Shown in pieces: positions 9,277 to 15,045 of a stretch of 64,000 bases of DNA; within the stretch, counting starts at the first letter, position 1; each line of letters starts with the position of its first letter. The stretch spans positions 186,001-250,000 of the IMG/VR virus record IMGVR_UViG_3300021964_000012; one strand, written 5' to 3'. The notes under the pieces are model-generated. The model did not search any database, was not told the origin of the DNA, and saw nothing but the letters and a program-made list of their open reading frames with translations. The translations under genes and the position numbers were made by a program.

Positions 9277-10071
9277 ATGAAAATACACTTTGATTTAATT
9301 TCTGATCTACATGTAGATACTTGGGATGAAGAATTCACCTGGGAAGGAAAAGCCACCAGCCTGTATGCCGTTGTAGCCGGAGATATCAGCAGAGATAGAT
9401 CCAAGTTACGTCCAGTGCTTGAGGAGATCAGCAAGCACTATCTTATGACCATGTTTGTTGATGGAAACGATGAACATAGATGGACCATGGATAATTTAGC
9501 TGAAAGTTATAAAACACTAAAACAAGAATTAACTGGTATTCCTAATTTTATTTGGCTACAAGATGACTCTTTAGTGATAGATAATATAGGATTTATTGGG
9601 ACCAACGGTTGGACAAGTTTTGATTTTGCAGAGGACAATTCCTATCTTGAAAATAAAAAATGGATGGAACAGACATATAAAATAAGCATGTTTGCTGGAC
9701 AACAAATTGAAGCAATGGCAATGCAAGATGCAGGTTTCTTGGTCAAGACTGTTGAAAGGCTGCAAAGACATCCTGATGTAAAAAAGATTGTTGTGGTATC
9801 TCATTTTGTTCCTAATGTAAATCTAATCAACCATGACACACAATTAGTTAACCAACCAAGTAGACTTAACACAACTGGTAATAGTTTTTTACTGAGATGT
9901 CTTGAAGAAGATCATGAACATAAAATTGATACATGGTGTTTTGGACACTATCACAGTGACGTTGATAGAGTTTTAAACGGTGTAAGGTATGTGAATAATT
10001 GTCGTGGTCGAGGTGGGACTAACTGGTGCAAACCAGTTTATTATCCTAAACGTATTGAAATTGGTTTTTAA
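9277..10071 (+). CDS. Calcineurin-like metallophosphoesterase
   Basis: DLH (ISDLHVD), AGD, GNDEH, SH and FGHYH motifs. Start moved to MKIHF. Confidence 0.85.
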   Translation: MKIHFDLISDLHVDTWDEEFTWEGKATSLYAVVAGDISRDRSKLRPVLEEISKHYLMTMFVDGNDEHRWTMDNLAESYKTLKQELTGIPNFIWLQDDSLVIDNIGFIGTNGWTSFDFAEDNSYLENKKWMEQTYKISMFAGQQIEAMAMQDAGFLVKTVERLQRHPDVKKIVVVSHFVPNVNLINHDTQLVNQPSRLNTTGNSFLLRCLEEDHEHKIDTWCFGHYHSDVDRVLNGVRYVNNCRGRGGTNWCKPVYYPKRIEIGF

Positions 10072-10373
10072 AGATCAGGTTCTAGTTTAACCTGCAAAGG
10101 AAAACCTTTGCTTCTAGCACACACTGTCACTTCTACGCCTTTTTGTTCAGCCATTTCATAAGGAAGTACTGCAACCACTGCACTGCCTTTTTCATGAATG
10201 TCTACAGTAATTTTTTCAGCAGTTGTTGGTGTATAATGAAAAATGTCAACAAGTGTTTCGATAACAAATTCCATTGCAGTTTTATCGTCGTTGACATAGA
10301 TCAACTTGAATAAGTGTGGTTCAGCTAGGGTAGTGCTTATTTCGGTTTTAACACTGGAATCTGGACTTGTCAT
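10068..10373 (-). CDS. clpS: ATP-dependent Clp protease adaptor ClpS
   Basis: NDDKTAMEFVIETL, IHEKGSAVVAV, YEMAEQK and FPLQVKLEP. Confidence 0.92.
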   Translation of the reverse strand: MTSPDSSVKTEISTTLAEPHLFKLIYVNDDKTAMEFVIETLVDIFHYTPTTAEKITVDIHEKGSAVVAVLPYEMAEQKGVEVTVCARSKGFPLQVKLEPDL

Positions 10374-10391
10374 GTATTTTCCTATTGTTGC

Positions 10392-10417
10392 TTAGTAGAG
10401 GGGAGACCCTCTACTAA
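10392..10417 (-). terminator. Intrinsic terminator/hairpin after hsp20
   Basis: TTAGTAGAGGG-GAGA-CCCTCTACTAA, an 11-bp stem. Confidence 0.7.
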
Positions 10418-10430
10418 TACTTATCTTTGG

Positions 10431-10874
10431 TTATTTGATTTCAATAGTTTTTGGCTTGAGGGCATCTGGAATGATTTTTTCTAAATGGATACTTAATACT
10501 CCATTTTTCATTTCTGCACTTTTTACTTCCACATACTCTGCAAGATTAAAAGTTCTTGTAAAGTTACGTCCTGAAAGTCCTCTGTGTAGATATTCAATTC
10601 CGTTTGCTTCATCTTCACCGTCAATCTTCTTAGGTTGGTTACCTGTGATTGTCAGTGTGCCATTTTCCATTTCTATCGTCATGTCTGCTTTTTCAAAACC
10701 AGCGGCCGCAATTTCTATGGTATAATTGTAATCATTCTCTCTGATGATATTATATGGCGGATAGTTCTGTGAACTTGTCATTTCAAAATTTGATGTGATT
10801 CTATCAAATAAAGAATCAAATCCAACAGCGTTACGATAAAAAGGGGTTAAGTCGAGTGAGGTTATTCTTGTCAT
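10431..10874 (-). CDS. Small heat-shock protein (Hsp20/IbpA type)
   Basis: GFD, NYPPYNI, EIAAAGF, YLHRGLSGRNFTRTFNLAEYVEV and NGVLSI.LE. Confidence 0.95.
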   Translation of the reverse strand: MTRITSLDLTPFYRNAVGFDSLFDRITSNFEMTSSQNYPPYNIIRENDYNYTIEIAAAGFEKADMTIEMENGTLTITGNQPKKIDGEDEANGIEYLHRGLSGRNFTRTFNLAEYVEVKSAEMKNGVLSIHLEKIIPDALKPKTIEIK

Positions 10875-11057: not shown

Positions 11058-13418
11058 TTAGAATGTCCAAGTATAATTGATACTTGCATTCTTATCACCG
11101 CTTTGACTTACGGCACCACCTACCTTAATCTTAGTATTAGTATCTAAGTTAAAGTTGTAGTTTGCTTTCAAGTAACCATTTATGTTTGTTGGTAACTTGA
11201 ATTTGTGTTCAGTGTAGTTAAGGTTGCCTGTTGAATCAACACTAGTAGGCACATTAGCAGTAACATCACCGTTTAGTAACACAGGATGTACACCAGCACC
11301 TAAGTCTAAGTTGCCTTGCTTGTATCCAAGCTCCCCCCATATACCAAATTGATCACTAACTTTTGTTATTAAACCTTTTTGGAAGTTTGTTTTAACATGC
11401 ATGGCACTTGCTCTTGCAGTAAAGCTACCTTTCTTGTATGTAACAACATTGTCAACAATGTTAGTGTTATCAACTTCACCCCATATGCCTGAGAAACCAA
11501 TCCATGGATTGCTATTCAACTTTGACAGATGCACACTGTAAGTTGTTCCATTGCCAGTTACTGCATTAGCATTGGTCCACATGTTTTGTCCTAGTGTGAA
11601 CTGTTGTGTTTTTGTATCGGCGCCAGCAATAACACCATTTTCAGTTGTAGTATTAAAACTAGAGATACTGTTGAACATTGTTGCACCATCAGAATCAATA
11701 TTTGTTTGTGCAAGGTTAACTGCATAGTTTCTTCCTATGCCGTCAAGTGCTTGACCAGTAACATCACCAATGTCAAATCCGTATACACTACCATTAAGTT
11801 TTAAACCGTTCATGGTAAGTGTGCCAATTGGTTGGAATGCTTTGTTGATATCAATTATTGTACCACCAGCAAATGATTGACCTGTATCAGTAAGTGCTTG
11901 AGCAGCTTGTGCATCACTTAGGTAACTCCAAGAATTTTGTATCATATTGATCGCAGTTCCTGCGGCTATTGTAGTTCCATCTAGCCTACTCATAAAAAAC
12001 GTAAGTTTATTATCATTACTGTCTCCGCCACCGGCACTGTTTGCCCATGTTACAAGATACTTGTAACCATCATCTGCTTGAAAAATGTTTACAGTACTAC
12101 CATTTATATCAGTCAAACCATTGGAAGTAGCAATTGATCTAACATCTGTCATAAAGTTAGTGAGTATGTTTTGATAAGCCGCAACGTATTTGTTATCAGA
12201 TGTTTTTAACAAAAACTGGTGACTGTTGTGTGGATTGTTCATAGTACTTGAATCACCACCACTGACCAATATGTCTGTTTTACCATCACCGTTAATATCA
12301 AAGAACCTTGGTTTATATGTACTTGAAGTATTGTTTTGATAACCAATTAGTGTAGAGCTTGTTGTATCAGTAAACACTCCACTACCGTTGTTTTGCATAA
12401 ACTGTATTTCGCTTAATTTGTCATCACCATTGTTTACTTTTTTGCTGAATACAATAACGTCTGCATATCCATCTTCATTAAAGTCGTGGTTGGCAATTTC
12501 AACACTATGATCTATACCGCTGGTACTAAATGCTGGAAGGTCTCTTTCATGTGTAAATTTAAGTACACCGCCTGTCCAGTCAACACTGTACATTTTAGTT
12601 GTGTTACTATCACTGCAAGTGCCGCTTACTACTGCACACTGAGCATCAGTAAGTATTACCTCATTGTTGTTACCGTTGTTCATAAAATTGCCTATTGCAA
12701 CTGCTGAACCACCGTATCTGAGATCACCTGTATTGCCTAATGCATCAACGTGTGTGGTAAATCCATTCACTTGGTTGTTGAGTGCAATAGTTGTATTTTT
12801 ATTTTTTAGATCCGGCATGATAATATCAATATAACCATCATTGTTCAAGTCACCAACATCACTACCATGTGACCAAACGTCTAAGGTTGGAATACTAACT
12901 TTGGTAAAGTTTGATCCATTATTAGTAAAGAAGGTAGCAGGACCAAAGTGTCTCATATCAGTACTGTGCGAAACAAACATATCTTTTCTGCCAGTTTTAA
13001 AGAAGTCAGCAAAATGAACATTAGGCTCTGTGCCCATTATTTCATTGTCGGTACCTGAAAACCACTGTGCAGTCTTATCAACCAATGAACCATTTTCAAA
13101 AGACAGCATGCTTAGTTTAGTGTTGCTCCATGTACCAGCTGTAGCAGGTTGTGTCTTCCTACCAGCAACTATAAAATCATCTGCATAACCATCACCATCA
13201 ATATCTTCTACAAATGTGTCACCAACGAACCATGCATTATCGTTACCACCTGCCATTGGATCAACTGTTACTTGTTGAACTGGCGGGGTATAATATAAGA
13301 CTGGACTTGGAGGATTTGGTGTGTAACCACCTCCGCCACCACCACCACCTCCGCCACAAGCGGAAAGAGCAGTTGCACCTAGTAGTGCGGCCACTATTCG
13401 AGTGTTTTGTTTTATCAT
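11058..13418 (-). CDS. Lipoprotein with FG-GAP/VCBS beta-propeller and C-terminal autotransporter-like beta-barrel
   Basis: Lipobox LSA-C, then Gly10. About six DxxxDGxxD repeats (DIDGDGYADD, DLNNDGYID, DFNEDGYAD, DINGDGKTD). Amphipathic C-terminal strands ending NYTWTF. Confidence 0.75.
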   Translation of the reverse strand: MIKQNTRIVAALLGATALSACGGGGGGGGGGYTPNPPSPVLYYTPPVQQVTVDPMAGGNDNAWFVGDTFVEDIDGDGYADDFIVAGRKTQPATAGTWSNTKLSMLSFENGSLVDKTAQWFSGTDNEIMGTEPNVHFADFFKTGRKDMFVSHSTDMRHFGPATFFTNNGSNFTKVSIPTLDVWSHGSDVGDLNNDGYIDIIMPDLKNKNTTIALNNQVNGFTTHVDALGNTGDLRYGGSAVAIGNFMNNGNNNEVILTDAQCAVVSGTCSDSNTTKMYSVDWTGGVLKFTHERDLPAFSTSGIDHSVEIANHDFNEDGYADVIVFSKKVNNGDDKLSEIQFMQNNGSGVFTDTTSSTLIGYQNNTSSTYKPRFFDINGDGKTDILVSGGDSSTMNNPHNSHQFLLKTSDNKYVAAYQNILTNFMTDVRSIATSNGLTDINGSTVNIFQADDGYKYLVTWANSAGGGDSNDNKLTFFMSRLDGTTIAAGTAINMIQNSWSYLSDAQAAQALTDTGQSFAGGTIIDINKAFQPIGTLTMNGLKLNGSVYGFDIGDVTGQALDGIGRNYAVNLAQTNIDSDGATMFNSISSFNTTTENGVIAGADTKTQQFTLGQNMWTNANAVTGNGTTYSVHLSKLNSNPWIGFSGIWGEVDNTNIVDNVVTYKKGSFTARASAMHVKTNFQKGLITKVSDQFGIWGELGYKQGNLDLGAGVHPVLLNGDVTANVPTSVDSTGNLNYTEHKFKLPTNINGYLKANYNFNLDTNTKIKVGGAVSQSGDKNASINYTWTF

Positions 13419-13450
13419 TGTAAAGTCTCCTATTCTCTAACAATATAAAC

Positions 13451-13478
13451 ACTATAGCATGCTATTTAGAACTGTCAA
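13451..13478 (-). promoter_or_regulatory. sigma70-type promoter (TTGACA-16-TATAGT, extended TG) with a 12-bp palindrome ATAGCATGCTAT in the spacer
   Basis: Read directly. The palindrome is at 13454-13465; a partial copy GCATGCTA at 13502-13509 overlaps the divergent late promoter. Confidence 0.65.
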
Positions 13479-13519
13479 CCTTTTTTATTATTGCATGGCA
13501 GGCATGCTAAATACATATA

Positions 13520-13563
13520 CGTTCACCCAAGAGGGCGGAAGTAGGCAATCGCTGAAGGAACGC
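13520..13563 (+). ncRNA. Glutamine riboswitch (glnA-motif class)
   Basis: CGUUC-A-[CCC AAGA GGG]-CGGAAGUA-[GGC AAUC GCU]-GAAG-GAACG-C. The P1/P2/P3 three-way junction has the conserved GGAAGUA and GAA E-loop strands. Confidence 0.85.
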
Positions 13564-13588
13564 ACTTAACCTTAAAAGGGAGAGTGTA

Positions 13589-13834
13589 ATGACAAACATA
13601 ATCGAAACTAAATTTGGTACCTTGGTTAATACAAAAAAGGTAGCCGCAGGAAGTGCATCTAGTATAAAAAAATCTGGTGCGTTTTATAGTTTTTCAATAA
13701 AAATAGCAAATGATGATATAAGAGAATACTCATTTACGGATCTTGCAAGAGCTCAGTATATGAGAACAATTATGATTGGTCATTTAGAAGAAAAAATTAA
13801 AAACGAAACTAAGAGTATTTCTAAAACTGCCTAG
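13589..13834 (+). CDS. Hypothetical 81-aa protein under glutamine-riboswitch control
   Basis: RBS GGGAGAG; directly follows the riboswitch; TAAATA promoter at 13508-13513. Confidence 0.7.
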   Translation: MTNIIETKFGTLVNTKKVAAGSASSIKKSGAFYSFSIKIANDDIREYSFTDLARAQYMRTIMIGHLEEKIKNETKSISKTA

Positions 13835-15045
13835 GCTGCTAATTTTAGTGGTTTCTTAACGAGGCCTGGAGTTATAACTACTTCGGTAATATCCTGTTTA
13901 GCATATTCTTTTAGGCTAAACATATGCGGCATCAATATACGTTCAAGCTCGGCTTGCAAACTTCTTGCTCCAGTTTTACGTGTTGCCGCATTTTTTGCGA
14001 TTTCAAGCAGTGCTTCATCGCTAAATTTTAATTTTACACCATCACATTCAAACAGATAGGTATATTGATCAATTAAACTGTTTTTAATTCCAGTAAGCAC
14101 ATATACCAACTGTTTTTCTGAAAGTTCTTTCAAACCTACCCATGTTGGAAAACGTCCTACAAATTCGGGAATCATACCAAACTTTACCAAATCATCTGGC
14201 TCCATATTATCAAGTTCACCTTCTGCATTTGTTTTAACATCAACACCAAAACCTATTCCAGAACCTTCAGCACGTCTTTTGATAACATCATTAATACCAA
14301 CAAAGGCGCCACCAGCAATAAAAAGTATATTTGTTGTATCAATATCTATCATTTCAGCCTGTGGATTTTTCCGACTAGCATTTTGTGCAGGAACTCTACA
14401 AACAGTTCCTTCTACCACTTTCAACAATGCTTGTTGAACGCCTTCTCCACTTACATCACGTGTAATGCTTGTGTTTTCACTTTTGCGAGCGATTTTATCA
14501 ATCTCGTCTAAAAATATTATACCTCTTTGGCATTTTTCAACATTACCACCAGCATTGCTTAATAATTTTCCAATCAGTGACTCAACATCATCACCTACAT
14601 AACCAGCTTCAGTAATACTTGTTGCATCAGTGACTGCAAACGGCACATCTAGATACCTTGCTACTGACTTTGCTAATAGTGTTTTACCACAACCAGTTGG
14701 ACCAAGGAGCAGAACGTTTGCTTTATCTAGTTCTAGATCTTTTGATTTGTTTTGTATTCTTTTGTAATGGTTTGCCACTGCAACACTTAGAACTGTTTTA
14801 GCGGATTCTTGTCCTATTACATATTTGTCTAAAAATGCTTTTAATTCGGTTGGATCAATGTCTTTGAATTTTACTGAATCAACTGTTTCTTTTGTAAGAG
14901 ATTTTAGTAAGTCGCCACATAGGTCTACACATTCGTTACAAATAGCAACTCTATCACCTACAATAAGTTTATTAACTTTATCTTTTTCTTTATTGCAAAA
15001 ATCACATCGATTGTATTGTTGTTTTTGTTCTTCGTCCATGGTCAT
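13831..15045 (-). CDS. clpX: ATP-dependent Clp protease ATPase subunit ClpX
   Basis: C4 zinc domain (CDFC...ICNECVDLC), Walker A GPTGCGKT, FLDEIDKI, RDVSGEGVQQALLK, IGF loop and GARSL. Confidence 0.95.
   Translation of the reverse strand: MTMDEEQKQQYNRCDFCNKEKDKVNKLIVGDRVAICNECVDLCGDLLKSLTKETVDSVKFKDIDPTELKAFLDKYVIGQESAKTVLSVAVANHYKRIQNKSKDLELDKANVLLLGPTGCGKTLLAKSVARYLDVPFAVTDATSITEAGYVGDDVESLIGKLLSNAGGNVEKCQRGIIFLDEIDKIARKSENTSITRDVSGEGVQQALLKVVEGTVCRVPAQNASRKNPQAEMIDIDTTNILFIAGGAFVGINDVIKRRAEGSGIGFGVDVKTNAEGELDNMEPDDLVKFGMIPEFVGRFPTWVGLKELSEKQLVYVLTGIKNSLIDQYTYLFECDGVKLKFSDEALLEIAKNAATRKTGARSLQAELERILMPHMFSLKEYAKQDITEVVITPGLVKKPLKLAA

What the first reader, a model, noticed from the sequence alone, without database searches (positions are those of the whole stretch)
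13506..13834. Glutamine riboswitch on a phage late promoter controlling an unknown 81-aa protein
Seen: a compact glnA-class aptamer starts about 6 nt after a TAAATA late promoter and ends about 10 nt before the SD. Known: glnA-class riboswitches bind L-glutamine and act as ON switches for nitrogen genes such as gifB. Inference: the phage senses host nitrogen status late in infection, and the small protein may tune glutamine synthetase, lysis timing or burst size.
Basis: partly seen in the sequence, partly recalled or inferred. Interest (0 to 1): 0.7.

Follow-up and report, generated by a model that had tools for sequence, protein, structure and literature searches.

The report
Phage glutamine riboswitch on late transcript
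A 328-kb marine phage carries a real glutamine-sensing RNA switch directly behind a late promoter; it probably controls translation of a small protein captured from its SAR116-type host, a new example of a known phage feature whose cargo has no known function.

Summary
Rfam's glutamine riboswitch model (RF01739) hits window 13518-13566 (+) at 53.7 bits against a cut-off of 35, and this is the only copy in the 328,292-bp phage genome. A TAAATA core (13508-13513) lies 6 nt before helix P1. NTAAATA is the most enriched upstream word in this genome and precedes portal, sheath and fibre genes. The genome also encodes a gp55-type late sigma factor.

The Shine-Dalgarno sequence (13577-13584) sits in a hairpin (13563-13586). 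The closing C of that hairpin is the aptamer's 'linchpin' C. The outer helix CACYU/RRGUG covaries without exception in 64 distinct viral sequences. The most likely mechanism is therefore a translational ON switch, as proposed for cyanobacterial gifB.

The 81-aa protein (p81) belongs to a narrow orphan family of SAR116 bacteria and their phages. In the bacteria it has no riboswitch. The same bacteria use the same riboswitch and platform, usually in tandem, for a 38-aa peptide and for a gltB-like gene. They also place tandem aptamers with a different 3' tail before an ammonium transporter. The phage cassette is therefore a chimera of host parts.

More than 120 viral contigs carry the riboswitch with this 3' tail, and most of those fetched also have the promoter motif and a micro-ORF. 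Phage glutamine riboswitches are already published. No evidence links p81 to glutamine synthetase.

The parts
13506..13513 (+). Late-promoter-like motif GCTAAATA (core TAAATA at 13508-13513), of the T4 TATAAATA type.
   Evidence: NTAAATA words are the most enriched 7-mers upstream of ORFs in this genome. They precede portal, tail sheath, tail fibre and virion genes. A gp55-type late sigma factor is encoded. The same motif lies 6 nt before P1 in relatives L008, L009, L010 and L012. No sigma-70-type promoter is found on this strand.
13519..13519 (+). Predicted transcription start, about 6 nt after the motif and 1 nt before P1 (inferred, not mapped).
   Evidence: Inferred from textbook T4 late-promoter geometry. 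In 51 of 71 distinct viral cassettes the distance from motif to CGTTCA is 6-9 nt. Metatranscriptome contigs cover 13536 onward, with about zero depth at 13308-13509 in three of four runs.
13518..13566 (+). Glutamine riboswitch aptamer, type 1 (glnA RNA). P1 is 13520-13524 with 13558-13562. P2 is 13526-13528 with 13533-13535. P3 is 13544-13546 with 13551-13553. The junction CGGAAGUA is 13536-13543.
   Evidence: RF01739 at 53.7 bits against 35. Junction and E-loop nucleotides are invariant, and P1, P2 and P3 show compensatory changes among phage relatives and SAR116 copies.
13563..13586 (+). Expression platform: an SD-sequestering hairpin. The outer helix pairs C13563-U13567 with G13582-G13586. 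The inner helix pairs C13570-U13572 with A13577-G13579. C13563 corresponds to the linchpin C that pairs with the junction G when glutamine is bound.
   Evidence: The hairpin is in the minimum-free-energy fold, at -7.9 kcal/mol on its own. The outer helix covaries: CACCU with GGGUG 40 times, CACUU with GAGUG 21 times, CACUU with AAGUG 3 times, and no mismatch. The mechanism is modelled on PMC6212724 and PMC11477058.
13577..13584 (+). Shine-Dalgarno region AGGGAGAG, 4 nt before the ATG.
   Evidence: Read from the sequence. Five of the seven positions 13578-13584 are almost fully base-paired in the folded leader; their mean unpaired probability is 0.28.
13589..13834 (+). Gene for the 81-aa protein p81 (stop codon included). 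It is an orphan family shared by SAR116-type bacteria and their phages.
   Evidence: There are 233 homologues at 70-99% identity and only 46 clusters at 50% identity in 1.84 billion proteins. The AF2 model has five strands and a long C-terminal helix, pLDDT 79. RNA contigs span the gene.

Best explanation
This is a self-contained phage cassette: late promoter, glutamine riboswitch, SD-sequestering hairpin and a small gene. Host RNA polymerase carrying the phage's gp55-type late sigma factor starts at about 13519, so the transcript begins almost exactly at helix P1 of the aptamer. Without glutamine, the nucleotides just after P1 (CACUU, 13563-13567) pair with GAGUG (13582-13586) and CCU pairs with AGG. 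This locks the Shine-Dalgarno sequence in a hairpin and keeps translation of the 81-aa protein low. When L-glutamine binds, a junction G (13537 or 13538) inserts at the base of P1 and pairs with C13563. This removes the closing pair and the stacking of the hairpin, frees the ribosome-binding site and turns translation on. The phage thus makes p81 late in infection only if the host glutamine pool is high. The cassette is a chimera of host parts. The riboswitch and platform match the one SAR116 bacteria use for a 38-aa peptide and a gltB-like gene. p81 is a SAR116 chromosomal gene that has no riboswitch in the bacteria. Shown: the aptamer, the motif enrichment, the sigma factor, the hairpin covariation, the chimeric origin and the presence of RNA. 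Inferred: the start site, late timing, ligand binding, ON direction and the function of p81, which is unknown.
For: Aptamer: RF01739 at 53.7 bits. Relatives score 42.9-62.1 bits, with compensatory changes in P1 (CGUUC/GAACG against CGUUG/CAACG), P2 and P3.

Promoter: ATAAATA is 16-fold and CTAAATA 8.7-fold enriched upstream of ORFs. The motif precedes portal, sheath, fibre and virion genes. phrog_234 (late sigma factor) matches at E 1.6e-23. The motif-to-P1 spacing is conserved in relatives. There is no sigma-70 promoter on the + strand and no terminator.

Platform: the SD is paired in the MFE fold. The outer helix covaries with 64 of 64 distinct sequences consistent. The same platform precedes a gltB-like glutamine amidotransferase gene in a SAR116-order genome, where induction by glutamine makes physiological sense. 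The published model for gifB is the same: the linchpin C and its neighbours pair with the RBS, and glutamine melts this helix (PMC6212724; linchpin G23-C60 in PMC11477058).

Origin: SAR116 genomes carry tandem RF01739 copies with the tail GCACCUAACUUUAA..AGGAGGGUG. p81 in SAR116 lies after rpoA, rplQ, a GIY-YIG gene and orf114, without a riboswitch. The phage p81 clusters with Ca. Levibacter p81. The cassette sits in different neighbourhoods in related phage contigs.

RNA: contigs from four metatranscriptomes span the aptamer 3' half plus p81, with about zero depth just upstream in three of them.
Against: No ligand-binding or expression data exist for this RNA. Simple thermodynamic modelling does not reproduce a switch: blocking C13563, or CAC, raises the mean unpaired probability of the SD only from 0.28 to 0.29-0.34, although the fold loses about 3 kcal/mol. 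The covariation could partly reflect two lineages rather than many independent events. The promoter matches only the TAAATA core (GCTAAATA against T4 TATAAATA). A gp45-type clamp was not found, though the control for that search was silent. The RNA-library contigs cannot fix a 5' end and may include DNA carry-over; run X15 does show depth upstream. The host assignment rests on gene similarity only.
Confidence: 0.62

Rival explanations
1. Same riboswitch, opposite sign. Glutamine binding stabilises P1 and, by coaxial stacking, the adjacent SD hairpin, so p81 is made only when glutamine is low (an OFF switch).
For: In the MFE fold P1 and the SD hairpin abut directly and both form. Modelling the loss of C13563 hardly opens the SD. 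Weinberg et al. noted glnA RNAs before GS and ammonium-transporter genes, where repression by glutamine would be logical (PMC2864571). In SAR116 the amt genes do carry the aptamer.
Against: The amt leaders use a different 3' tail (CGGAUC...), not the CACYU/RRGUG platform. The platform found here precedes a gltB-like gene, a glutamine consumer. The only type 1 riboswitch tested in vivo is ON, and the published model has glutamine melting the RBS helix (PMC6212724).
Confidence: 0.15
2. The aptamer is a hitch-hiking leader. The phage captured a host 5' UTR for its strong SD, and the riboswitch no longer regulates anything meaningful, so p81 is made constitutively late.
For: The cassette is a chimera of unrelated host parts. 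p81 is expressed without a riboswitch in bacteria and in a second phage group.
Against: All junction and E-loop nucleotides remain invariant, and the stems keep pairing through compensatory changes across diverged phage copies scoring 42.9-62.1 bits. The platform helix covaries. The same leader is kept in more than 120 viral contigs with several different cargo genes.
Confidence: 0.08
3. One reading: p81 is a phage-delivered regulator of host nitrogen assimilation, for example an inhibitor of glutamine synthetase or a PII partner, analogous to cyanobacterial IF7/IF17.
For: In cyanobacteria the riboswitch class controls the GS-inactivating factor IF17 (PMC6212724). The other cargos of the same phage and SAR116 leader are tiny basic proteins. 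The phage itself has no GS gene, so any target would belong to the host.
Against: p81 has no DUF4278 or other Pfam match and no significant fold match; it shows only weak PH-like or small-barrel-plus-helix resemblance, Z at most 5. Its bacterial orthologue lies beside the ribosomal-protein and rpoA cluster and lacks the riboswitch. In a second phage group it sits inside the structural module.
Confidence: 0.1
4. The TAAATA motif is not the promoter of this gene. Transcription comes from elsewhere or is not late.
For: The motif is AT-rich and short. Only the 6-nt core matches. Timing was not measured. A strong sigma-70-like promoter lies in the same intergenic region, but on the other strand.
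Against: There is strong genome-wide enrichment upstream of ORFs, including structural genes. The spacing to P1 is fixed in relatives whose upstream DNA is otherwise unrelated. A gp55 homologue is present. RNA depth starts at the riboswitch in three of four runs.
Confidence: 0.1

Closest known systems
Type 1 glutamine riboswitch (glnA RNA, RF01739) of the Synechocystis gifB leader
   Same: Same aptamer family, with a full-length model match and all conserved junction nucleotides. Same kind of expression platform: the linchpin C and the nucleotides after P1 pair with the ribosome-binding site. A translational ON switch is proposed (PMC6212724).
   Different: It is driven by a phage late promoter instead of an NtcA-controlled host promoter. 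The cargo is not a DUF4278/IF17 protein. The lineage is SAR116-type alphaproteobacteria and their phages, not cyanobacteria.
Glutamine riboswitches reported in phages: T4-like cyanophages (e.g. S-CREM1), Pelagibacter phage Mosig, OM43 phage Melnitz and pelagimyophage MAVGs (PMC9964418, PMC9004378)
   Same: A phage-encoded RF01739 aptamer in marine myovirus-like genomes with T4-type late transcription.
   Different: Here the genome is a 328-kb jumbo phage with SAR116-like host signals. The regulated gene is identified (p81), and the promoter and platform are defined. In Melnitz the element was interpreted as controlling a tmRNA.
Tandem glutamine riboswitches of SAR116-order bacteria found here
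   Same: Near-identical aptamer 2, 3' tail (GCACYUAAC...AGGRGRGUG) and SD context.
   Different: The bacteria mostly have two aptamers in tandem behind a sigma-70-like -10 box, and a 38-aa basic peptide as cargo (one genome has a single aptamer before a gltB-like gene). The phage has one aptamer, a late promoter and p81.
Downstream-peptide motif / glutamine-II riboswitch (RF01704) before short ORFs in picocyanobacteria
   Same: A glutamine aptamer in front of short ORFs of 17-100 aa outside known families (PMC2864571).
   Different: It is a different aptamer class (pseudoknotted type 2). It was not detected here at gathering thresholds.

Membership tests
Glutamine riboswitch type 1 (glnA RNA, RF01739) | Covariance-model score at or above the curated gathering score over the full model | tested here: met
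   53.7 bits against 35, model positions 1-53 of 53, E 5.5e-9. The whole-genome search gives the same score.
Glutamine riboswitch type 1 (glnA RNA, RF01739) | Three-helix architecture (P1, P2, P3) maintained by compensatory changes | tested here: met
   Among phage relatives, P1 is CGUUC/GAACG against CGUUG/CAACG, P2 is CCC/GGG against UCUC/GAGA against GGGGU/ACCC, and P3 is GGC/GCU against GGUUU/AAACC. All of them score above gathering.
Glutamine riboswitch type 1 (glnA RNA, RF01739) | Conserved junction CGGAAGUA (ligand-stacking Gs), the GAAGGAACG strand and the linchpin C directly 3' of P1 | tested here: met
   All are invariant in the 11-sequence alignment and match the model consensus. 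Their roles are taken from PMC11477058, which summarises Ren et al. 2015.
Glutamine riboswitch type 1 (glnA RNA, RF01739) | Selective binding of L-glutamine with a structural change | not testable with these tools
   This needs in-line probing, ITC or NMR.
Glutamine riboswitch type 1 (glnA RNA, RF01739) | Position in the 5' UTR of a gene on the same strand, with an expression platform | tested here: met
   The aptamer ends 11 nt before the SD. The SD hairpin covaries.
T4-type late promoter (gp55-dependent) | TATAAATA-like element at -10, without a -35 element, recurring before late (virion) genes | tested here: met
   GCTAAATA is present here. NTAAATA is 9- to 16-fold enriched upstream of ORFs and precedes portal, sheath, fibre and virion genes. 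There is no sigma-70 match on the + strand. Only the 6-nt core matches the T4 octamer.
T4-type late promoter (gp55-dependent) | The phage encodes a gp55-family late sigma factor | tested here: met
   phrog_234 match at E 1.6e-23, G000 319764-320069 (-), within a 313-aa open frame.
T4-type late promoter (gp55-dependent) | A gp45 sliding clamp and gp33 co-activator are present | tested here: inconclusive
   phrog_223 (gp45) was not found, but the tool's control genomes were silent as well. gp33 was not searched.
T4-type late promoter (gp55-dependent) | Mapped start site and late timing | not testable with these tools
   Only assembled metatranscriptome contigs were available.
GS-inactivating factors IF7/IF17 (DUF4278), considered for p81 | DUF4278 or IF-like sequence | tested here: not met
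   No Pfam family matches p81 at E up to 0.01. There is no PHROG match. No structural neighbour of that kind was found.
GS-inactivating factors IF7/IF17 (DUF4278), considered for p81 | Binds and inhibits glutamine synthetase | not testable with these tools
   This needs biochemistry. The single co-fold attempt gave no verdict and is listed under Tried and rejected.

The most novel reading that the evidence does not exclude
SAR116-type alphaproteobacteria and a large set of marine phages run a glutamine-riboswitch-controlled repertoire of micro-proteins: 31-65-aa basic peptides and, by cargo swap, p81. These could act as protein-level regulators of host nitrogen or translation physiology, the heterotroph counterpart of the cyanobacterial IF7/IF17 system. 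Phages would then deploy them from late promoters to reprogramme the host only when glutamine is plentiful. That would extend inhibitor-protein control of nitrogen assimilation beyond cyanobacteria, where it is currently held to be unique (PMC6212724).
Probability: 0.15. Interest if true: 0.75.

Novelty: new member of a known kind. Interest (0 to 1): 0.45.

Why it matters
Riboswitches in viruses are few. This one is a clean, compact case in which a phage ties one late gene to a host metabolite. It shows that the 'marine metagenome' glutamine riboswitches belong in part to SAR116 alphaproteobacteria and their phages. It defines a conserved expression platform, supported by covariation, that can be tested directly. 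It also shows a riboswitch leader moving as a module between cargo genes. The unknown cargo proteins, p81 and the micro-peptides, are good candidates for new small regulators of nitrogen physiology in abundant marine heterotrophs. The basic phenomenon, a glutamine riboswitch in a marine phage, is already published.

Tried and rejected
Nucleotide and protein searches of GenBank phage records with the region and with p81 found nothing.

p81 has no match in Pfam or PHROGs.

The Atlas feature search returned only unnamed viral clusters.

Fold searches against PDB (Foldseek and VIA wide), AFDB clusters and BFVD gave no significant match. The best were weak PH-like or small-barrel-plus-helix resemblances, at Z no higher than 5 and E of 0.017 or more. 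I do not use them for function.

A profile search of 1.84 billion representatives found no distant relatives, only 46 clusters, many of them fragments.

A co-fold of p81 with Ca. Levibacter GlnA scored 0.00. This is no verdict and is not evidence either way.

The micro-peptides behind other phage copies match no Pfam family, including DUF4278, at E up to 1.

Thermodynamic modelling of 'linchpin taken' states did not open the SD appreciably, so the ON direction rests on analogy and gene logic, not on folding energies. My first attempt to enforce the aptamer fold by constraints misbehaved and was discarded.

A gp45 (phrog_223) search was uninformative because its controls were silent.

Metatranscriptome contigs could not define the 5' end. 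The conserved aptamer attracts contigs from other riboswitch loci: loose ends at 13519 and 13571 lead into other cassettes.

An intrinsic terminator after the aptamer or the gene was looked for and not found, so transcriptional attenuation was rejected.

Full report
What is there. The window is bases 186,001-250,000 of a 328,292-bp IMG/VR virus record with direct terminal repeats, at about 37% G+C. Rfam's covariance model for the type 1 glutamine riboswitch (glnA RNA, RF01739) matches window 13518-13566 on the + strand. The score is 53.7 bits against a gathering score of 35 (E 5.5e-9), over all 53 model positions. It is the only Rfam hit in the window and the only RF01739 hit in the genome. 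Read against the model:
- P1 is 13520-13524 with 13558-13562.
- P2 is 13526-13528 with 13533-13535.
- P3 is 13544-13546 with 13551-13553.
- The junction CGGAAGUA is 13536-13543.
A TAAATA core lies at 13508-13513, 6 nt before P1. A purine-rich Shine-Dalgarno sequence (AGGGAGAG, 13577-13584) lies 11 nt after the aptamer match. The ATG at 13589 opens an 81-codon frame that ends at 13834.

The promoter. I called ORFs over the whole genome and asked which 7-mers are over-represented in non-coding DNA upstream of them. ATAAATA came first: 20 of 128 upstream regions, 16-fold over expectation. TAAATAY and CTAAATA (8.7-fold) followed. A second family, AGGTTGACA, looks like the -35 box of early sigma-70 promoters. 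Genes carrying NTAAATA 15-60 nt before their start include the portal protein, the tail sheath, tail-fibre and baseplate-connector proteins and several virion proteins. The genome encodes a homologue of the T4 gp55 late sigma factor: phrog_234, E 1.6e-23, at 319764-320069 on the - strand. No sigma-70-type promoter is found on the + strand in front of the riboswitch. A strong one on the - strand (13478 to 13451) serves the divergent 786-aa FG-GAP lipoprotein gene. From textbook T4 geometry, where the motif's last A is near -6, the transcript should start at about 13519, one base before P1. For typical late genes here the motif lies 15-30 nt before the ATG. For this gene it lies 75 nt before, which is a normal late leader with a 49-nt aptamer inserted. 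Late timing and the start site are inferred, not measured.

Relatives of the cassette. Six viral contigs carry the same arrangement: L007 is identical, and L008-L012 have p81 at 86-99% identity. Of these, L008, L009, L011 and L012 were scanned with Rfam and score 42.9-62.1 bits. In L008, L009, L010 and L012 an ATAAATA or TATAAATA lies exactly 6 nt before P1, although the DNA further upstream is unrelated. The stems keep pairing through compensatory changes: P1 is CGUUC/GAACG against CGUUG/CAACG, P2 is CCC/GGG against UCUC/GAGA against GGGGU/ACCC, and P3 is GGC/GCU against GGUUU/AAACC. These contigs come from phages that share other genes with this genome, but the cassette sits in different neighbourhoods. 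It therefore behaves as a mobile, self-contained unit.

The expression platform. Folding the predicted leader gives P1 followed directly by a hairpin at 13563-13586. CACUU pairs with GAGUG and CCU pairs with AGG, so most of the Shine-Dalgarno region is base-paired. The hairpin alone is -7.9 kcal/mol. The 80 loci that were fetched, together with the cassette loci already held (L001, L009, L011), gave 71 distinct leaders. In those leaders the outer helix is CACCU with GGGUG 40 times, CACUU with GAGUG 21 times and CACUU with AAGUG 3 times. There is not a single C-A or other mismatch. The seven remaining leaders could not be scored. The position that is U-A in this phage is C-G in most others, and both forms occur in front of several different cargo genes. 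This is good comparative support for the helix, with the caveat that lineage effects were not corrected for.

C13563, the closing base of this hairpin, is the C directly 3' of P1. In the solved Synechococcus aptamer the equivalent C60 forms the glutamine-dependent 'linchpin' pair with junction residue G23 (PMC11477058, summarising Ren et al. 2015). For the Synechocystis gifB leader, Klähn et al. proposed that this C and the nucleotides after it pair with the ribosome-binding site, and that glutamine binding melts that helix. They showed in vivo that the switch is ON (PMC6212724). The phage leader has this design. There is no U-tract terminator, so control should act on translation. A simple energy model in which C13563, or CAC, is made unavailable costs about 3 kcal/mol but barely raises the predicted accessibility of the SD, from 0.28 to 0.29-0.34. 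The ON direction therefore rests on analogy and on gene logic, given below, and not on folding energies.

Where the parts come from. p81 has 233 close homologues at 70-99% identity, but only 46 clusters at 50% identity in 1.84 billion representatives. It is a narrow orphan family. The cellular members are in SAR116-type alphaproteobacteria, including Ca. Levibacter, SCGC AAA536-G10, Ca. Marisalimonas and many single-cell genomes. There the gene lies in conserved synteny after rpoA, rplQ, a GIY-YIG gene and a 114-aa ORF. None of these bacterial loci has a riboswitch.

A second and larger group of viral contigs (L013-L053) carries p81 inside a structural module, between a phrog_12985 protein and tail genes. 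There it is translationally coupled to the upstream gene and again has no riboswitch. Three of the seven contigs of this group that were scanned carry the Mu-gpT-DE RNA. In a maximum-likelihood tree the riboswitch-linked phage p81 sequences group with Ca. Levibacter p81 (support 95/87) inside the bacterial radiation. The structural-module group is separate.

The same SAR116-order genomes do hold RF01739: 14 of 121 genomes sampled have it, and 12 of those 14 have it as a tandem pair. In one class the second aptamer is followed by GCACCUAACUUUAAUAGAGGAAGGUG...AUG and a 38-aa basic peptide (MTYRPYQWNKF...). This tail and SD are nearly those of the phage. One genome has a single aptamer with the same CACUU/AAGUG platform before a GATase_2 protein that is probably glutamate synthase. 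Another class has a different tail before an ammonium transporter. Induction of a glutamine consumer by glutamine fits the ON reading of this platform.

The phage cassette is thus assembled from three parts: a phage late promoter, a host-type riboswitch leader reduced to one aptamer, and a host gene that is normally unregulated by it. The likely host is a Levibacter-like SAR116 bacterium. That assignment rests on gene similarity only.

How common the design is. Of the 71 distinct viral leaders recovered, 56 have TAAATA within 30 nt upstream. The forms are TATAAATA 27, ACTAAATA 17 and GCTAAATA 8. The motif mostly lies 6-9 nt before CGTTCA. Their cargos are short, basic ORFs of 31-65 aa in several families, one of which is the SAR116 38-aa peptide family. 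Among the fetched loci p81 appears as cargo only in this phage, in L124 (the same contig as L007) and in its close relatives L009 and L011; L008, L010 and L012 carry it too but fell outside this analysis. None of the peptides matches a Pfam family, DUF4278 included.

Expression. Four metatranscriptomes from salt-marsh and marine samples hold assembled contigs covering 13536-13923, 13551-13798, 13563-13798 and 13557-13803, with few mismatches. In three of them depth is about zero across 13308-13509 and rises at the riboswitch. This fits a transcript that starts at the aptamer. However, contigs cannot fix a 5' end, the conserved aptamer also recruits RNA from other cassettes, and DNA carry-over cannot be excluded.

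The protein. AlphaFold2 on a 29-sequence alignment gives five short strands and a long C-terminal helix, with pLDDT 79 and pTM 0.61. Searches of PDB, AFDB clusters and BFVD, and a Foldseek-independent scan, gave only weak PH-like or small-barrel-plus-helix resemblances, with Z no higher than 5. The phage has no glutamine synthetase gene. I found nothing that ties p81 to GS, PII, lysis or burst size, so its function is unknown. Its conserved place beside the ribosomal and rpoA cluster in bacteria, and inside a structural module in other phages, argues against a dedicated nitrogen role but does not exclude one.

Comparison with what is known. Glutamine riboswitches were described in cyanobacteria and marine metagenomes, sometimes in tandem, before nitrogen genes (PMC2864571). 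They are reported in several phages: T4-like cyanophages (PMC9964418, PMC9602691), Pelagibacter phage Mosig, OM43 phage Melnitz and pelagimyophage MAVGs (PMC9004378). An earlier pelagimyophage survey using another tool found no riboswitches and could not define late promoters (PMC7029224).

The element here passes every membership test that sequence analysis allows for RF01739, and it works like the gifB switch. Four things are new:
- the genome, a jumbo phage with SAR116 signals;
- the cargo;
- the explicit late-promoter and SD-hairpin architecture with covariation support;
- the evidence that the leader moves between cargo genes.
I found no paper describing the SAR116 tandem riboswitches with their 38-aa peptide, or the phage micro-ORF cassettes, but my literature search covered open-access text only.

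Verdict. This is a new member of a known kind. Interest is moderate. It would be higher if the cargo proteins prove to be a heterotroph counterpart of the cyanobacterial GS-inactivating factors.

Noticed in passing
L066 1472-1640 (- strand), and L067, L068, L093-L096: SAR116-order genomes carry tandem glutamine riboswitches 4 nt apart behind a TATAAT-like box. They are followed by a conserved 38-aa basic peptide (MTYRPYQWNKF..ARxRAxxHKxLNYR..), an unannotated micro-ORF. 14 of 121 genomes sampled have RF01739.
   Followed up: partly
L088-L092 and L097: Other SAR116-order glutamine riboswitches precede an ammonium transporter (PF00909; tandem aptamers with a different 3' tail, CGGAUC...) and a GATase_2/gltB-like gene (single aptamer with the same CACUU/AAGUG platform as the phage).
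   Followed up: partly
L108-L187 (IMG/VR contigs): More than 120 viral contigs carry the riboswitch with the GCACYUAAC tail. Most of the 80 fetched have a TAAATA motif 6-9 nt upstream and a basic micro-ORF of 31-65 aa in several families, none with a Pfam match.
   Followed up: partly
window 13451-13478 (- strand) and 11058-13418 (-): A near-consensus sigma-70-type promoter (TTGACA, 16 nt, TG-TATAGT) overlaps a CTAAATA motif. It serves the divergent 786-aa gene, a lipoprotein-like protein with a poly-glycine run after the Cys and FG-GAP repeats.
   Followed up: no
window 10068-10874 and 13831-15045; G000 125417-127711: The jumbo phage carries a set of proteostasis genes: ClpX with its zinc finger, a 101-aa 'ATP-dependent protease' PHROG protein, Hsp20, and a 764-aa phrog_4871 ATP-dependent protease behind a TAAATA motif.
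   Followed up: no
whole genome G000: A second enriched upstream word, AGGTTGACA (8- to 10-fold), probably marks early sigma-70-type promoters.
   Followed up: no
L013-L053: A second phage group carries p81 without a riboswitch inside a head-tail structural module, start-stop coupled to the upstream gene. Three of the seven contigs of this group that were scanned also carry the Mu-gpT-DE RNA, RF03012.
   Followed up: partly
L002 (ENA contig of 633,835 bp) and L061: p81 also lies on a 634-kb metagenome contig packed with very small ORFs that lack Pfam matches, and on a 117-kb 'MAG' contig with a similar upstream region. Neither shows the SAR116 synteny. They may be very large phages or other elements.
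   Followed up: no
G000 319764-320069 (-), L087: The gp55-like late sigma match lies in a 313-aa open frame, much longer than T4 gp55 (185 aa). Only profile positions 35-136 match.
   Followed up: no
window 14520-14721: Very high metatranscriptome contig depth (up to 314) falls inside the clpX gene, with loose ends on both sides. This is most likely cross-mapping of conserved AAA+ sequence from other organisms.
   Followed up: no
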